64,000 nt of DNA from Phallusia mammillata (GCA_965637545.1 OZ281497.1:29016001-29080000); one strand, 5' to 3'; positions 31,461 through 43,969 are shown, numbered from the stretch's first letter. Made by a program: numbers and translations. Notes: generated from the sequence alone by a model not told the origin.

Positions 31461-32766
31461 CTGAAACATATAAACACAAAGCTGAACAGATTCCATATAA
31501 GTAATTCTTGGAAACATCTGTAATGTGGTTCAAAGGAATCTTTTCGTGTCCCAGTTTATGTGTTACATTGTAGGGGCAGCCTTGTATTACGGCAGAGGCT
31601 TATTTTTACGAGTCTATATTTAAAATTTACTCCTTGATTGGTGGGCCAACAGGACGATAAAGCCATTAATGGTGGGTATAAAGGTAATGTCCAGAAAGAC
31701 TGATACAATTTTAGAGACATGGTCTTTTACTGAATTTTATTGCACCATTTTTGACCCTGCGCAATATGTGTGTGTTACTCCGATCCAGGTTAATAGTAGA
31801 CACAATTCATTTTAATTCACAAAAAAAAAAACATTGTAGCTATAGTGCTCAATAGGTAAAGAGTTTTAATGTCGTAGGATTAGATGGACAAAAAAAGAAT
31901 TAATTTTCCCGTAATTGGCACAACCATTGAGAAAGCTTTCTGCACTATTGTTTACTGGGGATGAAAAACTTGTTCCATAAAAAAAGTTATGAAAAAATAG
32001 ATGATAATCTATTGTTTCACGAATAATAGTTGGTTGAAATCTTCAACAGCAAGGTAGCATATGAAACCTGACAACGATACAAGATTTGGGACTATTGAGT
32101 TAAACTTTTTGTTACATTTCATTGAAGAAAGCTAGCGTTAACCAAACTAAAAAAGTATTTTTAATTAGCAGACCAGTGTTTGTAATGAATATGGTACTGT
32201 TGATGTACAACCTGGAATGAAAATATTTTGAATAAGTATTTTAGTTAAAACATTTGTGTTTCACCATAAATTTTTATTCAATTTGCATGTAAGCTAATAC
32301 TTTTTTTTAAAGATTGTTAGTTTTAAGTGGACTTTCTAAAACTTCATTAAACAACATTCAAGGTTTAGATTTAGAAAATCTTCTAATTATAAGGTAGTGT
32401 TAAAAATTATTTGTTCAGTTGTTTGGGGTTTGCGGCTATTTAGTATCAAAATCTCATTTCTAACCTTGCAGTGTTTCGAACCCTGCATTGCTGCAGTGCG
32501 CTTTGCTTTGATTGTGCTGCAACACCCGATCCGTCTGATTTCAGACGCTTGAAACTGTCGAATTCTGGATAATCCCGTGCCTTTATGCTGTCGTATTATA
32601 ATCTGTGTTAAGGATTCTTTCTTTAAAAGAAATGCGCTGCACAGTGCACGGAAAAACATAGAAGGGAATTACCCTTTATGCTATCCGTCGGCTGCGGCTC
32701 TTAAATGACAAATGATATCGTTGAAATTGCTGAAACCTGTAACGTGCAAAAATAAAAAAAATAAAA

Positions 32767-35700
32767 ATGAGAAGTAAATGTGGAAGGTCTGCAAGTGGAT
32801 ATAACTTGTTTTGCGCTTCACTGAAAGGTGGTGGTAAGTAGTCATTAATTGTATAGTCATTTAAAAGTAAAGTTGTATAGGGATACTGTCAGTGGTGGGT
32901 TTCAACTTTTTTATCACTTTTTTATCAGCCGGTGCTATCACAAAAGTCATATTTTTTGCTGATTTTGTTACAAAAAGTCTATTGACAGTAACCAGTAATG
33001 GCAACCAGTTCGCAGATCCCATAAAATTTTATGGACCGATTGCAACCAGCTGAATCCCACCACTGGGCTCTGGATACAGTCATGCAATGGTTCTTTGACA
33101 CATTAATAGTGGAATACGCCCAATGACAGCATATGTGCCACACAAACCCCTGTTTATTTAGGTGTTTAGCTATCATAGCCCAATGGTCTACTTTTTGTTT
33201 ATCTGGAACTTTGGTGCAGAAAAATTTAATCATACACATGTCCATTCATTACCCCCGGACCTTTCCCCTTTGAATTCTTAAGTAAACAGTTTATTGCTCA
33301 AGTGACTATATGGCCAATGTTTGGCTCTCACTAATTCTGTTGCTCAGTTGTTATGTTCCTTATTATTTGGTTTGTGCAATTTGTTTAAATCAAAGCATGA
33401 CAAATAAAACAGTGAAATTAGTAAACACCTGTGGACCTGAACTACTGTGCCATTGGTGTGTGTTTATCTGATCTTTTTTCTGTTATATATGACATATGTC
33501 GGTGGGTGAAAAAAGAGTTAAGAAAACTAAACAATTACAAATTATATATCCAGTTACTACTTCCTGGAGTATAACCATTAACAAAGCTTTGCTGTTGAAT
33601 TATATTTAATAATATTTCAACCTTTACATATATTTATACAAGATTAATATGCTGATTCAACTGGTACTTTTTGACTTATAAGACATTTAGATTATGAAAA
33701 ACATGTTTATGTGGTTCCCCAGGCTGTTTACCGCTTAGGCTCTTAATAGTTAAACTTGAACTCTTCCAGTCACTGTCAACATGTATATATTGAAGCTATT
33801 TACGAAGTTACAGAAGTTACAGTGTAGCTGTAAACGTTTTTTCAAAAGAATTTTTTAAATTAAATATTGGCATAGTGACATTGAGTCTTGACTCGCCTTG
33901 TTTTTAAGCAGTTGCTTGGTCATAGTGGATGCAGTTTCCCTGTGGCTTATCCCAATTTGCGGCATCAAACTGATATGGCATGACATGTCAATTAAGCCTG
34001 TTACTTCCAATAAACTGCAGTACATTAAATGTAGCTACACTAGCCTATACAGTCAACTGTATGAGTTTGATAGAGTGGGCACTGTCTGCAGCTTAACTTC
34101 TAAATTGTTTCAGAAATTTCTACATTTGGTAAAGAATGGCAGAATTTATCAGAAAGTGAAAAAAATACTTGGAAGGAAAAAGCCAAGCAATCAATTCAAC
34201 CTAATATGACAGAAAGACAACAGAAATCATACATAAAAAGACAGACAGACATGATTACACACTGTGTGAGTGACATTATGATGTTATAAACAAGTAATAA
34301 GTTTGAGAAATGCTTAAGTAGGTTGTAGATTTTAGTGAAGAGTTAACTACAATATCTAATGCAGAACACTATCATACTAGTGCATTCTCTTAGAGCAAAA
34401 ATCTGGAGAAAGTAAATGTAGAGGTTGTGGGAATGGTGCTGAAGAGTGGTGTGTTGCAAGTATTTGGAACTAATAAATCTGTGCAATGGTTGGAAAACAC
34501 AATTGATGTCCAACGACAATTTGTATGCAATTCCCACTTAGGTAATGATAAATATTTGTTAAGCTAAAAAGAAGAAGCAGTTTTCCATGCTTGTATACCT
34601 CTTTTTATTTACAGATGGTTGTAACACAGTTGAGAATACTTTAAGAGAAAACTTACGTAGAATGGTCCAAGATTTATTTAATTCAAAGTACTGTAAGTTG
34701 TTTTTACTTACATAGTTTTAACAATTTTTTTAGCTGCAATGTTTAATTACAGCGGAAGCTGTTGGCAAAGCTTCTCGAGTTCCGTATAAGAAAAGAAATT
34801 ACACAGTTACTGGTTTGCCGGAAGGTGTCTCTTTTTCAAAACCTTCGAAATATGGGGTTCTTAAACTCAAACAAATTTTGTCAGTTAAGGAAAACATAAT
34901 GTTTACTGTTGACCGGTATGTATACACTTTTGTTTTTATATCATTGATCAATGTTGGTTTGTCATTTACTGTAAAAACTGATGTATTATTGTGTTTTTAG
35001 GATTGCTACAAATATAGAATTGGGAAAAAACTCTGAAGGTAATCTATCTCTGCAACATAACAAAACACCACTCTTACTAAGGTTTTCATTTTAAATACAG
35101 TAAAATGGCATATTTAAAATTACCAGTATATATAATGAAATCATTTTCACACATTCAATTTCCTACTTTTTTAATGATATTATTGTATTTAAGATGATCA
35201 AATTCCTAATGACGCTCAACAAAATGTTACCATGGAAGGAGATGATCAACATGTTGCTGAGGGTAATTTCATTTATTTCAGTTACTATTTGATAAACTGC
35301 CAAACGCTATTTCATAGCAGTACATCTAGTAAACATGCACTTATAATGGGCTAGTTATGTAAAATTTTTGTTTAATTACAGAGCAAGAGGAAGAAAATAC
35401 TGTTACTGCTGAAAGTTCAAACGAAACTAACAAAGAACACCTACAAAGTCAACCGGGTAAAATATGTGTTTTAAATCTTTTAGTGTTTTGCTGTAATATG
35501 CTTTGTGTTCCAGTGTGCCAAATGCAAACAAAATCATGACGCTGGTGGCCACAAGTGCAATAAGCATACATAGATGTAGGCTTACATTACAGATAACAGA
35601 AACTTAAGAAAGGTTAATTCCAATATTAATTATTTTTAACTTCGCTTAAGCTCATTGTGACACAAAAAAGGAAAGCTGAATAAAAGGACGTATCTATTTT

Positions 35701-36102
35701 TGTCCATTGATGTGTAACAGCTAATTTTGTAACCCTTTTGTCTATTTACGTATGTTTTAACATTTAGATGGAAGGAGATTAAAGAGAAGAAAAAAGGGAA
35801 AACCATTTTCAAAAAGAAAAGTCTCTAAATCAAAATGTAAGGTCATGTTACATTGTCAGAACTTTTTTAAATGACGTACTTACGTTTTGTAACACTTATG
35901 TTCGTCACTATCACAAATCGAATGCTTGGTTGTTTTTGTAGGGACCCCAAAACAACTAGACACTCTACGCAATGAGCCTGAAAACTATTGCTCGGGTTGC
36001 GGAGAATTTTATTACACCAGCACACAAGAAAATGAAGACTGGGTTATGTGCGCTTGTGGTTCATTTCATCACGAGTTTTCGTGCCAGTGCCACTGCAAGT
36101 AG
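32767..36102 (+). CDS. Transposon accessory protein, ~339 aa: HMG box + GTF2I-like I-repeat + acidic linker + basic NLS + PHD-like finger; exons 32767-32833, 34114-34265, 34394-34541, 34615-34692, 34753-34915, 35001-35038, 35194-35262, 35382-35456, 35768-35836, 35942-36102
   Basis: Ten GT-AG exons join in frame with no stop (1020 nt). HMG: RSASGYNLFC..GKEWQNLSESEKNTWKEKAK. I-repeat: LRRMVQDLFNSKYSEAVG..VPY..VTGLPEGVSFSKPSKYGVLKLKQILSVKENIMFTV. C-terminus: YCSGCGEFYY..EDWVMCACGSFHHEFSC. Confidence 0.88.
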
Positions 36103-36940
36103 GAAGTAGCCCAATACATTGCATTCAATAAAAGAAAAAAATCGTTTTACTTTGTGCATTCGTTGTTTTTTTACTAAGATTGGGAAAAGTGAAAAAAGGG
36201 CTAAAACCGCAAACCGGCGTACCCCACTTAGCAAGAGTACCTCACTTAACCCATGCCATAACAGGAAATAAGCGATGGGACTAAATAGGGCCTTAAACAA
36301 GGGCTAAGCATGCATTTTCGCGGTTGGTATATGCAGACTAAGTGACCTTAGCGTAAGCTAAGCGAGCTAAGTGTTGGCTGCGCAGGCTGAGGTAGCTCGC
36401 AGTTTTAACGGGATCCAAGACTTGTGAAAAACATAAAATAGATTAAAATGATGTGATGTTGAGGCATGGATATGTGACAATAAAGAGAGTAAACATATTC
36501 AAAAGTAATGGAACGTACTGTCGTTTCAGTTTTTATGAGGTAAACAATATCAACAACACCAATAGCCAGCAACAAATTACAAATTTCCAGGTGTTAGTTA
36601 CTCACTGTACCATAACAATGGTTTATTACGTCACTATTGATAGTTGTTGACGAATTTAAAAACAATGATTATTCAACGCACTTAAGGTTTTGACTGGTAG
36701 TAAAAATTAACGCAATTCCTTCCCTTGCATGCAACCTGTATATAAACACCCAAAAGGAAGGGTAATGAATAAAATTTGTTGACAACTTGTAGTGTTACAA
36801 ATCAAAACGCCCAACATTGCCAGTTCAATTAGTTTAAATACCTGGTTTGGCAAAGAATAGTGGCCTGCCATAAGTCATAATGCGTGTCTGTTTTTTTAGT
36901 TTAAATTTACCTCAGTTTGTTTGTGTGAGCCGGTCGTTCT

Positions 36941-38586
36941 ATCTTTAACCGTACGTGTTTTGTAGTCGATTGGGCTTAGCCGCACAGACAACTAGTAATA
37001 ATTCAGGCGGTCGTGCCCTTCATTTCATGACGATGCACGCTTCTCATTTTTGATTCTCTTATTGAAGTAACCTGAAACTTTGCAAGCTGTTGGTGACTGC
37101 AATTATAAATTGGCTAGTGAAAACCGTTTCGTTTTATCTTTAACCGTTCGTGTTTTGTAGTCGATTGGGCTTAGCCGCACAGACAACTAGTAATAATTCA
37201 GGCGGTCGTGCCCTTCATTTCATGACGATGCACGCTTCTCATTTTTGATTCGCTCATTGAAGTAACCTGAAACTTTGCAAGCTGTTGGTGACTGCAATTA
37301 TAAATTGGCTAGTGAAAACTGTTTCGTTTTATCTTTAACGGTTCGTGTTTTGTAGTCGATTGGGCTTAGTCGCACAGACAACTAGTAATAATTCAGGCGG
37401 TCGTGCCCTTCATTTCATGACGATGCACGCTTCTCATTTTTGATTCGCTCATTGAAGTAACCTGAAACTTTGCAAGCTATTGGTGACTGCAATTATAAAT
37501 TGGCTAGTGAAAACCGTTTCGTTTTATCTTTAACCGTTCGTGTTTTGTAGTCGATTGGGCTTAGCCGCACAGACAACTAGTAATAATTCAGGCGGTCGTG
37601 CCCTTCATTTCATGACGATGCACGCTTCTCATTTTTGATTCGCTTATTGAAGTAACCTGAAACTTTGCAAGCTATTGGTGACTGCAATTATAAATTGGCT
37701 AGTGAAAACCGTTTCGTTTTATCTTTAACCGTTCGTGTTTTGTAGTCGATTGGGCTTAGCCGCACAGACAACTAATAATAATGATTCGGACGGTCGTGCC
37801 CTTCATTTCATGACGATGCACGCTTTTCATTTTTGATTCGCTTATTGAAGTAACCTGAAACTTTGCAAGCTGTTGGTGACTGCAATTATAAATTGGCTAG
37901 TGAAAACCGTTTCGTTTTATCTTTAACCGTTCGTGTTTTGTAGTCGATTGGGCTTAGCCGCACAGACAACTAATAATAATGATTCGGACGGTCGTGCCCT
38001 TCATTTCATGACGATGCACGCTTTTCATTTTTGATTCGCTTATTGAAGTAACCTGAAACTTTGCAAGCTGTTGGTGACTGCAATTATAAATTGGCTAGTG
38101 AAAACCGTTTCGTTTTATCTTTAACCGTTCGTGTTTTGTAGTCGATTGGGCTTAGCCGCACAGACAACTAGTAATAATTCAGGCGGTCGTGCCCTTCATT
38201 TCATGACGATGCACGCTTTTCATTTTTGATTCGCTCATTGAAGTAACCTGAAGCGTTGCAAGCTGTTGATGACTGCAATTATAAATTGGCTAGTGAAAAC
38301 CGTTTCGTTTTATCTTTAACCGTTCGTGTTTTGTAGTCGATTGGGCTTAGCCGCACAGACAACTAGTAATAATTCAGGCGGTCGTGCCCTTCATTTCATG
38401 ACGATGCACGCTTTTCATTTTTGATTCGCTCATTGAAGTAACCTGAAGCGTTGCAAGCTGTTGATGACTGCAATTATAAATTGGCTAGTGAAAACCGTTT
38501 CGTTTTATCTTTAACCGTTCGTGTTTTGTAGTCGATTGGGCTTAGCCGCACAGACAATTAATAATAATGATTCGGGCGGTCGTGCC
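36941..38586. repeat. Tandem array of a 195-bp unit (198 bp in two units), ~8.4 copies
   Basis: Unit starts (atctttaac) at 36941, 37136, 37331, 37526, 37721, 37919, 38117, 38312 and 38507. Confidence 0.95.
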
Positions 38587-38857
38587 CGGTAGAGCTACTA
38601 ACACCATAACGAGAATCAGAACTTCGCTTTCACAAGGGGGCGTAAAGAGCTGAATTTTTACTTAGCGGCTATAAATGGGTTGGGAAATAATTACATACAA
38701 TTTTTGCATTAGTAACTAATTTTTGGGTTAGTTTTATTGAATTTTAAGTGCTAATACCTTACTCCGATCCTAATAGCCCTAACCGTGAACATTTTTGGAG
38801 ATACAACTAACCACATTTGGGTGTGTGATTCTCGTTATGGTGTTAGTAGCTCTACCG
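38587..38857. mobile_element. MITE-like element, 271 bp, abutting the tandem array
   Basis: Perfect 32-bp TIR CGGTAGAGCTACTAACACCATAACGAGAATCA; no TSD visible. Confidence 0.8.
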
Positions 38858-39347
38858 TTTACTACAGAGAGAATTTAAAATTTGCACAAAAGCTTTACAA
38901 TCGCATATTTAGAAATTTTCTGACAAGAAGGCGACCAAAATAATGCATGATTGAAACATATAGAACACAGATAGTAAAACAGTTAATTGCGCGGTCGCCA
39001 ACTTTAATTTCCAACAAAAAAGTAACATAGCAGACAGACAGTGACGCAACAATCGCAATCAAACGAATAATGCTTTACAGTTTACACTTTAAGCCTTGCA
39101 TTTATTTGTAACTATATTTCGTATTGGTTGACTTGCTTTGATGAAACGAATATTAAACATTTAAAAAACGTTTTGCCATAAACGAGGCAATCTACCACAT
39201 GTATAAACCTTATTTGGACATTTCAAAGTTAACCGAAAAGCACTGGAGCAATAGAATTACTTAAACATAAATCACAGTTGAAAAACAAAACACAAAACAC
39301 ACAAAAAAGAACACCAGCACTACAATTTAACTTTACAAATCAAGCTA

Positions 39348-42300
39348 TTAATCCTCATCATCACTTTCATCCGTTGAATAGTCAGCACATTCTGGTTCCA
39401 AAAAAGGAATAATTTGAGGAGTTTCAAGGGAGTTTGAGGAAGTAGGCAATTCAAGATGTTCAGCGAAACTGCCTCTTAAGTTTTGCACAAGGCTTTGAAC
39501 TTTAAATTTTTGGCAAATCAAGTAGGAAGATAAATTACCATTGATTACAATTTCTCTCTCAAGTTGACAAATTAGTTGCTCATTAAACTGTAATACACTA
39601 GTCATTTCCCTTTTTACTATGACAATTTCTTCCTTTGACCTTTCCATAACAAAGTATCTGTCAAGTATTTTTTGAAAAGAATCTTGCTGTGTAGCATTTG
39701 GTATGTCATTAGGCTTTACAAAAATATCTGCAAGTGTTACTCTTTCAGGGCATTTGGTGACTTCAATGCCTGACATTGTGTTGTACTTCTTGATTAACTT
39801 TTTTGTTACCAATGTGACCCTTTTCATATTTTTGGATATCTTGTCAAAAATTGCTTGTCCAGCTATAGGAGGCAAAAAGAATAGTTTGTTCACTTGGCTG
39901 CAATATCCCCTATTCTTCTACTATACTATTTTCTGCTGTAATTATGATTAGTATTTGTTTCCAACATGATTTGGTAAACCAATCTATCTGAAAACTTACA
40001 TGAATACTTCCGTATTAAAGTTGAAAGGAAACTGCGTTCAAAGTTCTGACATTGCAACTTAACCAACAACTCCTGCCTTTTCTTTTCTGCTGCAGTCACT
40101 AGTAACAAGTCTAGTTCTTTCAAACTTAAGTTCTGAACACTTCCTTTTTTTCTTGATCCTTCAAGTTGTTTCTCTAACCTGTACAAAAGGCATTAGTATA
40201 GTGCTGTTATATTTGGCTAATTAAAGTTTTTCCTAAAACTGTAATATGCTAAATTTATACTACCTGGCAACCTGGCCTGTCAAGTCTAAGACCTCTGTAC
40301 AATCTGAATTTCCTTGAGTTTCAAGTGCATTAATACGAATTCTGTAAACAAAGAAAAATTGAGTGCTATTTATAATTGTTCAAACTGCAGTAAAACCATT
40401 TTAAACCTGTTTGCATTTAAATCGTGCATTTTTAATGCATATTCCTCTTTGTGTGAAAGTTTTAGCTCTTTGCATGCATCACTGATGACATAAGGGCATT
40501 TAGAAGCATTTTCTACCTCTGAAAGAGACAGTCCTCCTGTAAAAGTTTGTATTGGGTAAATCAATAAATTGACAAAATTAAGCTATAGTATATCAACTAA
40601 AATGCTGTTAAAAATAACCTTCAGTGTTGTTTTAAAAAAATACAGACCTGGATAGGATTCCATCATCAGAGAGAGCTCAGCTTCAGCCTGATGCAATGCA
40701 ACTTTAGCATTACTTAACCTTTGAACCAATATAGACCCTGCAAAGTGTTTTTTTAATAAATAAATTTTTACATATTTTTTCATATTATACTTAACCAACT
40801 TAAACATTGTTCTACCCAGGTTAAACTTTATTTTTCTTCCATAATGTAGGAGTGCATCAGTTAGTAAATCAATTCTATGTTCTGGTTTCATTTCTTTTGT
40901 TATTTTGGCAAATTTCCGTAGATATGACCAAAGTCTTTCAACAGTTTCTCCCTCTGTTAGTCCAAATCCAACTTTTCGCCTAGGGCTGTATTGCATCTGG
41001 ATTTTAATTAAATTTGAGTGTTAGAATTACTGTTTACTTTGTTTTACATGTAAAACCTCAGGTCATTACCTGGCATGCAACATTATGACCATAGCCATGA
41101 AAAATAGGCACAGCAAAAATGAACTTGTTTAAATTTGATGCAGGTAGTCGAATCTAAACCAATATATGAGTATATCTGGTTCGTAGTTAAAAAAGAAAAA
41201 CCCATCCCTGGCATACATACCTTTATGTGTTCCTGTAGTTTACATGCTATATCATAAAATATCTTTATGTCTGCATTTTTGTTTTGTTCCATAATTTTTT
41301 TCAAACAGAAAACTGGATAACCTAGCCTGGGCGCATTGACAGGCTAGCATTGAAAAAAACAGCAAAATGATTATAAAGCAGTTACTAACCTCTCCCCATG
41401 TTTCATATCAACAAACAATTTCGGATATGCATGCTTACAACATACACCAAAAATTCCTTTTACATCAAGTTTAGCTATTTTGTTGACAGAGCGGATTTTG
41501 GTTCCAGCTTTAAAATCACTACACATCTACACAAAAACAAAAACGTACTCACAGATTAGATAAATATGTTCTTAAATGTGTTTTTATTTGGATTTTACTG
41601 TTTTTGATGCTGTGTCATGAGCATAGCTGTTGACAAAGCCATCCACTTGCTCTTCATTAACAAAAAACAGGCCATTATGATGGGGAGAAGCACTACTTTT
41701 GCCAGCAGCCCTTCTTCTTACTAAGCCAAAATTTCCATCAAAGCAATACATATCTTCACATGTTGGATCCTAAACGTATTAAATTTCCTCATCAATTTCC
41801 AACTATGCCACTTGCTAATCTTTTGGTAACAAGTAAAACAACTACCCCTTTGCACGCTGGACATTGGGACCCATTGTCATTCAAATTTTGTAAAATTGAG
41901 GGCAGGTTGTTTTGAATTTGATAGACATGGTGTCTGTAAGATTCAAGGACTTCATTTAGCAAAATCTTCGAAAGGTCTTTTATCTGCTAAGTTTAAACAG
42001 CTTAAAAGTTTATCCTTTCAAGACTACCATAGATGTACATTTACCAAACAATTATATCCTGGTGTATTTTCATGCAACATTGTCATTGCAATGCAAAATC
42101 CATGAGTGGAAACCTGTTGTTCGAGACTAAGGGTACGGATAAATTCCATTAAATTAATGCTCACGGCTACCTTTGGGGAAACTGGTGAGCATGGCCATAA
42201 ATTGTACCTTAAAAGAGTGGCACTTTCCTGCTCACAGGAGCAAAATTCTGCTACTGCCAAGTGTTGAAATCCTATAAACAATATAAATTCAATTTTGAAA

Positions 42301-42911
42301 AGGTCATTGCTTTAAATGCACTGTGATAAATCACCTTTACTGTCTATTACAGTTAGTTTCTTTTTGTGCAATGTTGAGCAATGATGGCCATCACTTCGAT
42401 GCAAACAAACATCGTTTAGTTTTTTTTTGACAAACATGTTGTCCTAAATGAAATTTTGCATGAAATGTTAAATAAATTCAAAATCAAGAAAACAGCATAC
42501 CTGCCAAACATCTGGTCTATGGAATAGAACAAAGCAATGGACCTCCTCCCAGCATGAAACACAATAATAGGCATTCCAACCACAATCTTGGCATCTCAAC
42601 CCGTCTGTTTTAAAGTCCAAGCTAATTTTACATCGTGAACAGACACATCTTTCAGGATAACGAAAATTGCCTATTTCAACATTAAGGAGGTCTTTTTCCA
42701 ATTCCCTCCACCTTAGACTTAAAGTGGATCTTTTTTCGGCATAAGAAGAAGGTTCACAAGGGAAAGTACTGACTTCATCCTGAACTGAACTCTTCGTAGT
42801 ATCGGATTCATGCCTATTTTGCGATAAATATGAGCTACAAAACAGTAAGCACTTCTTCTTTTTAACACTTTTTATTTTGTACAGTGACGATATTTTTCTT
42901 CACCTAGGCAT
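39348..42911 (-). CDS. KDZ transposase with N-terminal CxC zinc-binding region, ~852 codons, 14 exons: 42911-42501, 42443-42335, 42271-42045, 41986-41846, 41769-41599, 41526-41390, 41326-41221, 41153-41070, 40996-40816, 40737-40648, 40536-40407, 40341-40264, 40178-40000, 39862-39348
   Basis: Motifs RCQDCG..YCVSCWEEVH..FHRPDVW, FCSCE..LLRYNLWP.SP, CPAC, CFDGNFGLVRR, CKHAYP..DMKHGER, FYDIAC, VPIFHGYGH..CQ, GFGLTEGETVERLWSYL. All phases are consistent. The only lesion seen is a TGA at codon 4 (MPR*RK). Confidence 0.92.
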
Positions 42912-43485
42912 AGCAAGACCAAGAAAAAACTAACAGCTGAAATACGTATGCCTGAATATGTGGAAGATTGATAAAATTGTCATTAGATGGTGAAGGTAAT
43001 TCGGAAATGCAGCCTTTAGGTTTAGAGTTAGGGAAACTGCCCATCCAAAACCGGGAACCACCCTACACAAAACAGGCTAAAGTTGCGACTTTTAAGCGTA
43101 GAATCCCTAATACAGGTTATAATACAACAGCATCAAGGCCCGAGATTACTCAGAATTCGACAGTTTCAAGCGTCTAAATCAGACGGATCGGGTGGCTGCA
43201 AATATGTGACGTAATATTAACACAGGAAGGTTGGATCGGCACTGAATGCTGACGTCAGTTAACATACTACTTGTTGCAATTTTTATTAATTATATGTGGT
43301 CATCGAAATTATTGTTTGAAAGTAAAGACAAACGCTCAAAGCTGTATACGTAATTGAAGTATTTTTGACTGTACTTGTCCATTAGGGTGGCCACCACACG
43401 CACCTTCGATCGCATTGTGAGTTACCATATTTTTTGTTATTTTCGTTGATAGTTAGTACAGTTAATCATTACAAAATTGTCAAAA

Positions 43486-43546
43486 ATGTCACTTCAACTC
43501 CTAAAGTTTGCTCTTTTTGTCTGTTCGTTGAGTTTGCTGCACAAAG
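43486..43546 (+). CDS. Signal-peptide first exon, paralog A (MSLQLLKFALFVCSLSLLHK|G)
   Basis: ATG to phase-1 GTAAGT donor, 61 nt; homologous exons at 46006 and 61947. Confidence 0.65.
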
Positions 43547-43599
43547 GTAAGTGGTTTTAAAAAAAATTTCTTCAAAAATGTCTACTGATAGAAGTAGAG

Positions 43600-43969
43600 T
43601 TCTTTGCAGTTTCGTGATCAAGCGCTGCAACCACGTAGAAATACCTGGTGCTTTCTGATGTAATGCTTCTCAGGGCAAATTGTGCTTCAGCCTGTTGAAA
43701 CCATACGCGTGGATTGGAGGTCCAAAAAGTTGGCAATTTCAATGTAACTGCATGTTGCTGTTGGGCTTCTTCTGGATTAGACATAGTATTCTTACAAATG
43801 CCGTTTGTAAGCTTCGGGGTCACCAAATGTGGCGAGCGTTAGCTGTTTATTTCGCGACGTCCAAAATAGAATGAATAAATACAAAGTGTCATACAAGCGA
43901 AGAAAGAGAACACGAGAAAAGGGCACATTTAACACGCTTTGATAAATGCGGGTCGGCAGAGTCGCTACA
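43600..43969 (-). mobile_element. Ty3/Gypsy LTR retrotransposon 5' relic: short LTR (~43969-43828), PBS, gag start
   Basis: TGTAGCG...CGCCACA followed by PBS TGGTGACCCCGA (matches the tRNA-Trp 3' end); gag reads MSNPEE..LKLPTFWTSNPRVWFQQAEAQFALRSIT..RYFYVVAAL. Confidence 0.8.

What the first reader, a model, noticed from the sequence alone, without database searches (positions are those of the whole stretch)
32523..43194. Complete two-gene KDZ transposon carrying a chromatin-reader accessory gene
Seen: TIRs, a TSD, a 14-exon KDZ transposase (-) and a convergent intact 10-exon HMG + I-repeat + PHD gene (+), all inside one 10.7-kb unit. Established: KDZ elements are DDE/RNase-H transposons; fungal ones travel with TET/JBP and HMG genes, and fish Zisupton encodes a single large ORF. 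Inference: this is a metazoan bipartite KDZ family whose accessory protein binds DNA/chromatin (target selection or anti-silencing). I do not know of a published description of this architecture.
Basis: partly seen in the sequence, partly recalled or inferred. Interest (0 to 1): 0.92.

Follow-up and report, generated by a model that had tools for sequence, protein, structure and literature searches.

The report
Two-gene KDZ transposon, conserved across phyla
This is a complete 10.7-kb cut-and-paste transposon of a sea squirt that carries, besides its KDZ transposase, a second expressed gene for a DNA-binding protein; soft-coral transposons share the gene pair, the end sequences and 7-bp target duplications, and the second protein is related to the vertebrate transcription factor TFII-I.

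Summary
Window 32523-43194 is bounded by ~107-nt inverted repeats with 19 perfect terminal bases and a perfect 7-bp target duplication (GCTGCAA). The minus strand holds a KDZ transposase (Pfam KDZ plus CxC cluster). I could assemble it into an uninterrupted 796/822-aa ORF from 14-15 GT-AG exons, but this model has no RNA support. The plus strand holds a 10-exon gene. All nine of its introns are confirmed by RNA contigs from two studies, and its 339-aa product equals a database protein labelled Phallusia mammillata.

The product has one full GTF2I-type I-repeat (Pfam 1e-19, fold match to ten solved I-repeats). It also has a short, sub-threshold HMG box and a Cys/His tail that is only weakly PHD-like.

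The decisive result comes from the octocoral Dendronephthya gigantea. Three diverged subfamilies there place a homologous accessory gene convergent with a KDZ gene. In two of them, including five 97-99.8% identical copies at different sites, the pair lies between TIRs alignable with the ascidian TIRs and flanked by 7-bp duplications. So the accessory gene belongs to this transposon lineage and is not a chance capture.

Its function as a DNA-binding transposition cofactor is inferred. The Phallusia copy number is low, and the transcript's 5' end reaches outside the TIR. The scan had noted the I-repeat and the domain fusion on this same stretch before.

The parts
32516..32522 (.). Left copy of the 7-bp target-site duplication, GCTGCAA
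   Evidence: Read directly. It is identical to 43195-43201.
32523..32629 (+). Left terminal inverted repeat, starting CACCCGATCCGTCTGATTT
   Evidence: Multi-copy word depth starts exactly at 32523 in DNA runs X1 and X21. It aligns with the coral TIRs.
32477..36128 (+). Accessory gene of 10 exons: 32477 or earlier to 32833, 34114-34265, 34394-34541, 34615-34692, 34753-34915, 35001-35038, 35194-35262, 35382-35456, 35768-35836, 35942-36128 or later. The CDS is 32767-36102 and encodes 339 aa. An alternative in-frame joint 32833>34615 skips exons 2-3.
   Evidence: RNA-contig joints from two studies. All splice sites are GT-AG and the translation equals P0011. Pfam GTF2I 1.1e-19, HMG 19 bits. Foldseek matches GTF2I-domain NMR structures at E 5e-6.
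32890..33065 (.). Nested, hyper-abundant 176-nt MITE in intron 1 of the accessory gene. It is not part of the element's own machinery.
   Evidence: 18-nt inverted ends (pair I16). Word depth is about 90,000 against about 27 for unique DNA.
36934..38587 (+). Internal tandem array between the two genes: 195-bp unit, 8.4 copies, 97% matches. Six of the copies carry TGAAACTTTGCA.
   Evidence: There are analogous arrays at the same position in coral subfamilies 1 and 3.
39348..42911 (-). KDZ transposase gene. Model exons: 42911-42904 (uncertain), 42834-42501, 42443-42335, 42271-42045, 41983-41846, 41769-41599, 41526-41390, 41326-41221, 41153-41070, 40996-40816, 40737-40648, 40518-40407, (40341-40264, optional), 40178-40000, 39862-39351, then the stop codon.
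   Evidence: Pfam KDZ and CxC2/CxC1 on the pieces. The splice model gives an uninterrupted ORF. tblastn against the coral KDZ genes is collinear at 25-63% identity. The motifs CFDGNFGL, FYDIACK and GETVERLWSYL are read directly.
43089..43194 (-). Right terminal inverted repeat
43195..43201 (.). Right copy of the 7-bp target-site duplication, GCTGCAA

Best explanation
SHOWN. Window 32523-43194 is a full-length DNA transposon of the KDZ (Kyakuja-Dileera-Zisupton) superfamily, probably in the ascidian Phallusia mammillata. It has roughly 107-nt TIRs and a 7-bp target duplication. It belongs to a lineage that also lives in octocorals. The layout of that lineage is: TIR; accessory gene reading inward, with its ATG about 245 nt from the end; usually a tandem array of 190-300-bp units; KDZ transposase gene reading inward from the other end; TIR. 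The accessory gene is spliced and expressed.

INFERRED. The accessory protein is an element-encoded DNA-binding cofactor. Its parts are a short HMG-like box, a module homologous to the N-terminal part of TFII-I, one I-repeat, an acidic linker, a basic nuclear-localisation-like stretch, and a Cys/His tail. The closest analogies are the Myb-like second protein of PIF/Harbinger and HMGB1 in RAG and Sleeping Beauty reactions. On that analogy it would bind and bend DNA at the element's ends and/or the internal array, help assemble or target the KDZ transposase, and perhaps also regulate the element's transcription or chromatin state. From my own knowledge, the N-terminal region of TFII-I is a dimerisation region.

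The variable C-terminal module may be a tethering module. In corals it is a beta-rich domain also found on other transposon proteins. In Phallusia it is a PHD-like finger.
For: - Structure of the element.
- Splicing and expression of the accessory gene in two studies. The product equals P0011.
- Conservation of the gene pair in coral: five copies of subfamily 1 at different sites (L001, L002, L003, L016, L017), plus subfamilies 2 (L011) and 3 (L019).
- Exact 7-bp TSDs in L001, L017 and L019 as well as the window.
- TIR termini are alignable across phyla, with 22 invariant columns out of 68.
- Accessory proteins share 34% identity over 246 aa (E 3e-33), and an intron falls at the same place before SEA(V/C)G.
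- The KDZ genes are collinear, with shared borders at about aa 330, 375 and 439.
- I-repeat fold.
- Arrays between the genes in three of four lineages, two of them sharing an exact 12-mer in every unit.
- TIR-like words are 20-30 times more abundant than the interior in DNA run X1, as expected if short derivatives were mobilised in trans.
Against: - No experiment or binding data exist. Whether the accessory protein is needed for transposition is pure analogy.
- The HMG box is below the Pfam cutoff and PHD is unsupported by Pfam and AlphaFold.
- The Phallusia protein lacks the homeodomain-like N-terminus and the C-terminal domain of its coral relatives.
- RNA contigs of exon 1 reach 46-127 nt outside the TIR, so at least some transcripts start in flanking DNA.
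- The interior is low-copy in Phallusia: depth 27-42 against 15-19 for the flank.
- KDZ expression is untested.
- The shared 12-mer has a chance probability of about 0.01 and was found post hoc. It is absent from coral subfamily 3, and subfamily 2 has no array.
- The GGATTA motif known for GTF2IRD1 is not enriched.
- Pocillopora-type copies of the accessory homologue have no KDZ within 10 kb.
Confidence: 0.7

Rival explanations
1. Immobilised or half-domesticated copy. The Phallusia element is a low-copy relic whose accessory gene now serves the host as a transcription factor. It would be driven by a promoter in the flanking DNA, while the KDZ gene is silent.
For: - RNA contigs of exon 1 start outside the TIR.
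- Expression is steady across many RNA runs of several studies.
- The interior is low-copy.
- The architecture is reduced compared with the coral proteins, with a new Cys/His tail.
- A MITE has inserted in intron 1.
- Vertebrate TFII-I shows that this protein type can become a host factor.
Against: - The TSD and the 19-nt termini are perfect.
- The KDZ ORF can be assembled over about 800 codons and 14 introns without any stop or frameshift. That is unexpected for a decaying relic.
- TIR-related words are 20-30 times more abundant than unique DNA, which points to activity of the family.
- A second, slightly diverged copy or haplotype exists in run X1 (record 7).
Confidence: 0.2
2. Anti-silencing or chromatin-targeting cargo. 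The accessory protein does not take part in the DNA reaction. Instead it reads or alters chromatin, protecting the element from silencing or steering integration, as proposed for TET/JBP genes in fungal KDZ elements.
For: - Fungal KDZ and other transposons carry TET/JBP genes thought to counter methylation (PMC12730594).
- The C-terminal modules vary between lineages. The coral domain has AlphaFold DB look-alikes at the C-termini of piggyBac-derived, reverse-transcriptase and DNA-polymerase proteins.
- The Phallusia tail resembles PHD fingers by language-model features, with scores of 0.77-0.88.
- The sea-urchin relative P0021 ends in a chromodomain.
Against: - PHD is not supported by Pfam or by the AlphaFold model.
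- The conserved core of the protein (HMG-like box, TFII-I-like N-terminal module, I-repeat) is of the DNA-binding or dimerising type, not a histone-reader type.
- This rival is not exclusive of the best explanation.
Confidence: 0.25
3. Chance capture. A host GTF2IRD1-like gene lies between the TIRs of this one copy by transduplication or nested insertion, and has nothing to do with the transposon family.
For: Databases name P0011 'GTF2IRD1-like'. Only one copy is present in the window.
Against: - The same gene pair, in the same orientation and order, and with the ATG about 245 nt from the end, is found in three diverged coral subfamilies and in the ascidian.
- The accessory homologues are multi-copy in corals, with 16-26 members per 90% cluster.
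Confidence: 0.04

Closest known systems
Zisupton (fish and other metazoan KDZ elements; Bohne et al. 2012, as cited in PMC12730594 and PMC9297572)
   Same: It has a KDZ transposase domain with an N-terminal cysteine cluster, a multi-exon transposase gene, and TIRs.
   Different: Zisupton makes 8-bp TSDs and is described as carrying one large transposase gene. Here the TSD is 7 bp in four insertions, and a second conserved gene plus an internal tandem array are present.
Kyakuja (fungal KDZ; Kojima 2025, PMC12730594)
   Same: It makes 7-bp TSDs, has 5'-CA..TG-3' termini, and carries a second gene besides the transposase.
   Different: Kyakuja families were reported without TIRs, and their cargo is a TET/JBP dioxygenase. 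Here the TIRs are 96-134 nt long, the cargo is an HMG/I-repeat protein, and the hosts are animals. The phylogenetic position within KDZ was not tested.
PIF/Harbinger two-protein transposons (transposase plus Myb/SANT DNA-binding protein; mentioned for Nuwa in PMC12730594)
   Same: The element encodes a DDE-type transposase and a separate DNA-binding protein that is conserved across the family.
   Different: The transposase superfamily is unrelated, the DNA-binding domains are different, and the TSD is 3 bp. A requirement for the second protein is shown for Harbinger (my own knowledge) but not here.
Vertebrate TFII-I family (GTF2I, GTF2IRD1)
   Same: The I-repeat fold and sequence match: Pfam 71 bits, and 33-41% identity to solved repeats. 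About 70 residues N-terminal of the repeat align with the TFII-I N-terminus.
   Different: The vertebrate proteins have 5-6 repeats, no HMG box, and are single-copy host genes. The transposon protein has one repeat and sits next to a transposase.

Membership tests
KDZ transposon superfamily | KDZ transposase domain (PF18758) | tested here: met
   Five exon pieces hit consecutive parts of the profile (positions 4-48, 53-100, 108-136 and 166-213). The best pieces score 42.3 and 27.5 bits against a cutoff of 26.6.
KDZ transposon superfamily | N-terminal CxC cysteine cluster | tested here: met
   PF18803 CxC2 scores 40.5 bits and PF18802 CxC1 scores 39 bits, against cutoffs of 27.
KDZ transposon superfamily | Acidic catalytic residues in conserved motifs | tested here: inconclusive
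   The motifs CFDGNFGL, FYDIACK and GETVERLW are present and are conserved in the coral genes. I assigned the catalytic residues from memory of the family, not from a structure.
KDZ transposon superfamily | Terminal repeats and a 7-8-bp TSD | tested here: met
Zisupton sensu stricto | 8-bp TSD | tested here: not met
   The TSD is exactly 7 bp in the window, L001, L017 and L019. Extending to 8 bp fails in each.
Zisupton sensu stricto | Phylogenetic placement of the transposase | not tested
Kyakuja | 7-bp TSD and CA..TG termini | tested here: met
   The termini are CACCCG...CGGGTG and the TSDs are 7 bp. The criteria are taken from PMC12730594.
Kyakuja | No TIRs (as reported for Kyakuja-1/2_LB) | tested here: not met
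   TIRs of 107 nt (window), 134 nt (L001) and 96 nt (L019) are present.
GTF2I / TFII-I protein family | GTF2I-like I-repeat | tested here: met
   PF02946 covers its full length at E 1.1e-19. The top ten Foldseek hits are GTF2I-domain NMR structures.
GTF2I / TFII-I protein family | Several tandem I-repeats in a single-copy host gene | tested here: not met
   There is one repeat, and the gene lies inside a transposon.
HMG-box proteins | HMG box (PF00505 / PF09011) | tested here: inconclusive
   P0011 scores 19.4 bits against a cutoff of 25.4, covering profile positions 25-57 only. The coral homologue P0102 scores 24.8 bits (PF00505) and 22.5 bits (PF09011, cutoff 22.4). Foldseek hits to TFAM and HMGB3 have E 0.5-1.5.
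PHD finger | C4HC3 zinc-finger signature or a Pfam PHD model | tested here: inconclusive
   There is no Pfam hit at E up to 1. AlphaFold pLDDT is 30-46. The spacing after the His is too short for a canonical PHD. Language-model neighbours are PHD clusters at scores of 0.77-0.88, which is a lead only.
Two-component DNA transposons (Harbinger-like logic) | A second, DNA-binding protein gene conserved across the family | tested here: met
   It is present in four lineages across two phyla.
Two-component DNA transposons (Harbinger-like logic) | The second protein is required for transposition | not testable with these tools
   This needs a transposition assay.

The most novel reading that the evidence does not exclude
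The vertebrate TFII-I family (GTF2I and GTF2IRD1, the Williams-Beuren syndrome genes) may descend from the accessory gene of this ancient KDZ transposon lineage. The TFII-I N-terminal module plus the I-repeat exists as one unit in transposon-borne proteins of cnidarians and a tunicate. It would have been domesticated and its repeat multiplied at the base of vertebrates. In the transposon, the same module would act as the end- or array-binding partner of the transposase.
Probability: 0.4. Interest if true: 0.88.

Novelty: new variant of a known kind. Interest (0 to 1): 0.78.

Why it matters
KDZ elements in animals have been treated as single-gene, multi-exon transposons (PMC9297572). Accessory genes were known only from fungi, where they encode TET/JBP (PMC12730594).

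A gene pair, target-duplication length and layout shared by ascidian and octocoral elements, with alignable ends in the two coral subfamilies whose termini could be defined, point to a distinct two-component lineage. Its second protein can be tested directly, for example by transposition assays with and without it, or by binding to TIR and array DNA.

The finding also gives the I-repeat and the TFII-I N-terminus their first context outside vertebrate host genes. That makes the origin of a medically important transcription-factor family a testable case of transposon domestication.

Tried and rejected
- The 181-aa last KDZ exon found nothing in the word-indexed protein search, within its length limits.
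- Exact look-ups of P0011 and P0061 found no contig on record.
- No KDZ was detected by tblastn or Pfam next to the Pocillopora/Tara loci L006-L010, the ENA loci L013-L015, the sea-urchin locus L005 or locus L004. Desmophyllum locus L018 was not screened; it has only 3.9 kb downstream and no KDZ gene called. The pairing is therefore shown only for Dendronephthya and Phallusia.
- The GTF2IRD1-type GGATTA motif occurs once in the left TIR but is not enriched in the element or the array, so I dropped it as a binding-site argument.
- Rfam found nothing credible in 32000-43700.
- The coral C-terminal domain has no significant PDB match.
- A tree of the shared module separates cnidarian from deuterostome sequences but does not resolve the direction of transfer.
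- One literature query was badly framed and gave nothing useful.
- DNA run X21 lacks both the interior and the flank, so it says nothing about an empty site.


Full report
ANATOMY

The stretch 32523-43194 is bounded by inverted repeats. The terminal 19 nt (CACCCGATCCGTCTGATTT) are perfectly complementary, and a further 90 nt are 84% complementary. The 19-mer occurs nowhere else in the window, against zero expected in shuffles. Directly outside both ends lies GCTGCAA, a perfect 7-bp target-site duplication; an eighth base does not match. In DNA runs of the same species, multi-copy word depth begins exactly at 32523. That independently marks 32523 as a repeat-family boundary.

THE TRANSPOSASE

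- Stop-free pieces on the minus strand between 42311 and 40586 hit consecutive parts of Pfam KDZ (PF18758). The piece at 42024-42281 hits the CxC2 and CxC1 cysteine clusters above their cutoffs.
- I enumerated frame-preserving GT..AG pairs and obtained a model of 14 exons, or 15 with an optional in-frame 78-nt exon. It reads through without a stop to a 796- or 822-aa protein ending DESDDED.
- The first coding exon (ATG 42911) is a guess.
- I had already spent the single read-laying run on the other half of the element, so this model has no RNA support.

THE SECOND GENE

- RNA contigs of two independent studies (X4, X13) give nine GT..AG joints on the plus strand, and one alternative joint that skips exons 2-3 in frame.
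- Joining the ten exons gives an ORF from ATG 32767 to a stop at 36100-36102.
- Its 339-aa product is identical to P0011, a UniRef/nr protein labelled GTF2IRD1-like from Phallusia mammillata. The window therefore most probably comes from this ascidian.
- Pfam finds one complete GTF2I-like repeat (residues 136-203, E 1.1e-19). It finds only a partial, sub-threshold HMG box (residues 18-49) and nothing for the Cys/His-rich tail.
- An AlphaFold model built on an alignment of relatives is confident for residues 8-204 and poor for 205-339. Its ten best PDB matches are all solved GTF2I domains, at E 5e-6 to 3e-4.
- A language-model search of residues 280-339 returns PHD-finger clusters at scores that the tool itself calls leads only.
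- So the I-repeat is solid. The HMG box is probable by homology, because the coral relative P0102 reaches the cutoff of one HMG model. PHD is unproven.

IS THE SECOND GENE PART OF THE TRANSPOSON?

A phmmer search with the I-repeat exon found the multi-repeat vertebrate TFII-I proteins. It also found a family of single-repeat proteins with a homeodomain-like N-terminus, an HMG box, a conserved middle module, the I-repeat and a C-terminal domain. These proteins are multi-copy in corals, with up to 16-26 members per 90% cluster.

Subfamily 1 in the octocoral Dendronephthya gigantea:
- Five loci (L001, L002, L003, L016, L017) carry 97-99.8% identical copies of an element of about 14.3 kb, each with a different left flank.
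- Each copy has the accessory gene on one strand and a KDZ gene converging on the other.
- The TIRs are 134 nt long and start CACCCGTTCCG, which matches the ascidian terminus CACCCGATCCG at 10 of 11 bases.
- L001 and L017 have exact 7-bp TSDs, TAAGAAA and GTTCCAA.

Two further coral subfamilies, whose accessory proteins are only about 38-42% identical to the first:
- L019 is a 9.8-kb element with 96-nt TIRs starting CACCGG and the TSD GTACGGG.
- L011 has an extra protein-kinase gene between the two genes.

Homology between the ascidian and coral elements:
- The accessory proteins share 34% identity over 246 residues, E 3e-33. An intron falls at the same point, before SEA(V/C)G inside the I-repeat.
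- The ATG lies 244-247 nt from the element end in both.
- The transposases are collinear at 25-63% identity. Alignment breaks coincide with my exon borders at about residues 330, 375 and 439.
- The first ~33 nt of the TIRs of the ascidian element and of coral subfamilies 1 and 3 can be aligned.

Together these results exclude a chance capture. They show a two-gene KDZ lineage in Cnidaria and Tunicata, either old or moved between them.

A THIRD RECURRENT FEATURE

A tandem array sits between the 3' ends of the two genes:
- 195 bp x 8.4 in the window;
- 187 bp x 11 in coral subfamily 1;
- 305 bp x 6.5 in coral subfamily 3.

The ascidian and subfamily-1 units are otherwise unrelated, but they share the exact 12-mer TGAAACTTTGCA. 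It occurs at most once per unit and in the same orientation as the accessory gene: in every unit of the coral array and in six of the ascidian units. I estimate a chance probability of about 0.01, and the match was found post hoc. A related 9-mer, CTTGAAACT, lies 26 nt inside both ascidian TIRs. I treat this as a candidate protein-binding site, not as a result.

MECHANISM

What is shown is the architecture, its conservation, and the expression of the accessory gene. What is inferred is its role. The conserved core consists of an HMG-like box, a module that aligns with the N-terminal part of TFII-I, and an I-repeat. From my own knowledge, HMG boxes bend DNA, the TFII-I N-terminal region is a dimerisation region, and I-repeats are the DNA-binding units of TFII-I and GTF2IRD1. 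The most economical reading is a dimeric DNA-binding cofactor that helps the KDZ transposase find or pair the ends. This follows the logic of the Harbinger Myb-like protein, or of HMGB1 in other DDE reactions.

The variable C-terminal modules suggest an added tethering or chromatin function:
- The coral beta-rich domain is modelled at pLDDT 85. Its AlphaFold DB look-alikes sit on piggyBac-derived, reverse-transcriptase and polymerase proteins.
- The ascidian protein has the Cys/His tail.
- A sea-urchin relative has a chromodomain.

RESERVATIONS ABOUT THE PHALLUSIA COPY

- In DNA run X1 the interior has word depth 27-42 against 15-19 for the flank, and a second slightly diverged copy or haplotype is visible. 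The element is therefore low-copy. TIR-like words are 20-30 times more abundant.
- RNA contigs of exon 1 run 46 nt (X13) to 127 nt (X4) beyond the TIR into flanking DNA. At least some transcripts therefore start outside the element.
- A hyper-abundant MITE sits in intron 1.
- The protein is shorter than its coral relatives.
- These points keep a partly domesticated or immobilised state alive as a rival, at about 0.2. Against it stand the perfect TSD, the perfect termini and an uninterrupted ORF of about 800 codons.

COMPARISON WITH KNOWN ELEMENTS

- Published animal KDZ/Zisupton elements are described as single, multi-exon transposase genes (PMC9297572).
- Zisupton makes 8-bp TSDs. Kyakuja makes 7-bp TSDs with CA..TG ends but was reported without TIRs and with TET/JBP cargo (PMC12730594).
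- This lineage has 7-bp TSDs, CA..TG ends, long TIRs and an HMG/I-repeat gene.
- Its position inside KDZ was not tested. Repbase and Dfam could not be consulted, and full-text searches found no paper linking GTF2I repeats with KDZ elements.
- I therefore class it as a new variant of a known kind.

SIDE RESULT: TFII-I

The N-terminus and first I-repeat of vertebrate GTF2I and GTF2IRD1 align with residues ~58-203 of the transposon protein and with the coral proteins. In the non-vertebrates examined, this module was found either in transposon context or in multi-copy genes. This makes domestication of a KDZ accessory gene a serious hypothesis for the origin of the TFII-I family. A small tree does not settle the direction of transfer. 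Earlier notes of this scan on the same stretch (s1-375390, s1-375491) had raised the I-repeat and the domain fusion. I tested and extended them here.

Noticed in passing
window 32890-33065: A 176-nt MITE with 18-nt inverted ends (CAGTGGTGGGTTTCAACT) is nested in intron 1 of the accessory gene. Its word depth is about 90,000 in DNA run X1 against about 27 for unique DNA, which means thousands of genomic copies. It is also abundant in RNA runs.
   Followed up: partly
window 32396-32522: RNA contigs of accessory exon 1 extend 46-127 nt beyond the left TIR into flanking DNA. Positions 32423-32510 of that flank have 91%-similar copies elsewhere in the genome, so the flank may be another repeat that supplies a promoter.
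   Followed up: partly
window 32833>34615 (alternative joint): An in-frame isoform skips exons 2-3. It removes the second half of the HMG-like box and the TFII-I-N-terminal-like module. It is seen in both RNA studies at roughly 40% of the depth of the main joint.
   Followed up: no
window 37073-38065; L001 15971-17826: The exact 12-mer TGAAACTTTGCA occurs at most once per unit, in the same orientation, in the internal arrays of the ascidian and coral subfamily-1 elements (six of the ascidian units, all eleven coral units). The related 9-mer CTTGAAACT lies 26 nt inside both ascidian TIRs.
   Followed up: partly
P0003, P0005, P0067, P0078, P0094 versus P0011 residues ~58-203 (alignment A1): The N-terminal region and first I-repeat of vertebrate GTF2I/GTF2IRD1 are homologous to the core of the transposon accessory proteins. 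This may point to a transposon origin of the TFII-I family.
   Followed up: partly
L011 7156-8792: Coral subfamily 2 carries a protein-kinase gene between the accessory and KDZ genes, in place of a tandem array. The same arrangement is present in a second copy (L012).
   Followed up: no
P0105 residues 388-501 (model me2f8cbbdbe81): The beta-rich C-terminal domain of the coral accessory proteins has no PDB match. It does resemble C-terminal domains of piggyBac-derived, reverse-transcriptase and DNA-polymerase proteins in AlphaFold DB, so it looks like a domain shared among unrelated mobile elements.
   Followed up: partly
L005 (Lytechinus pictus, P0021): A sea-urchin relative combines an HMG-like region, two I-repeats and a C-terminal chromodomain in a 32-kb gene. 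No KDZ gene was detected in the fetched locus.
   Followed up: no
L006-L010 (Tara coral metagenomes, Pocillopora-type; P0155): The accessory homologue is present on hundreds of contigs within a repeated unit of at least 14 kb that also holds a reverse-transcriptase fragment. No KDZ was detected within 10 kb downstream.
   Followed up: partly
window 38570-38618 / 38826-38874: A 49-nt inverted repeat (84% complementary, 207 nt apart) lies just after the tandem array. Its first arm overlaps the last, degenerate array unit.
   Followed up: no
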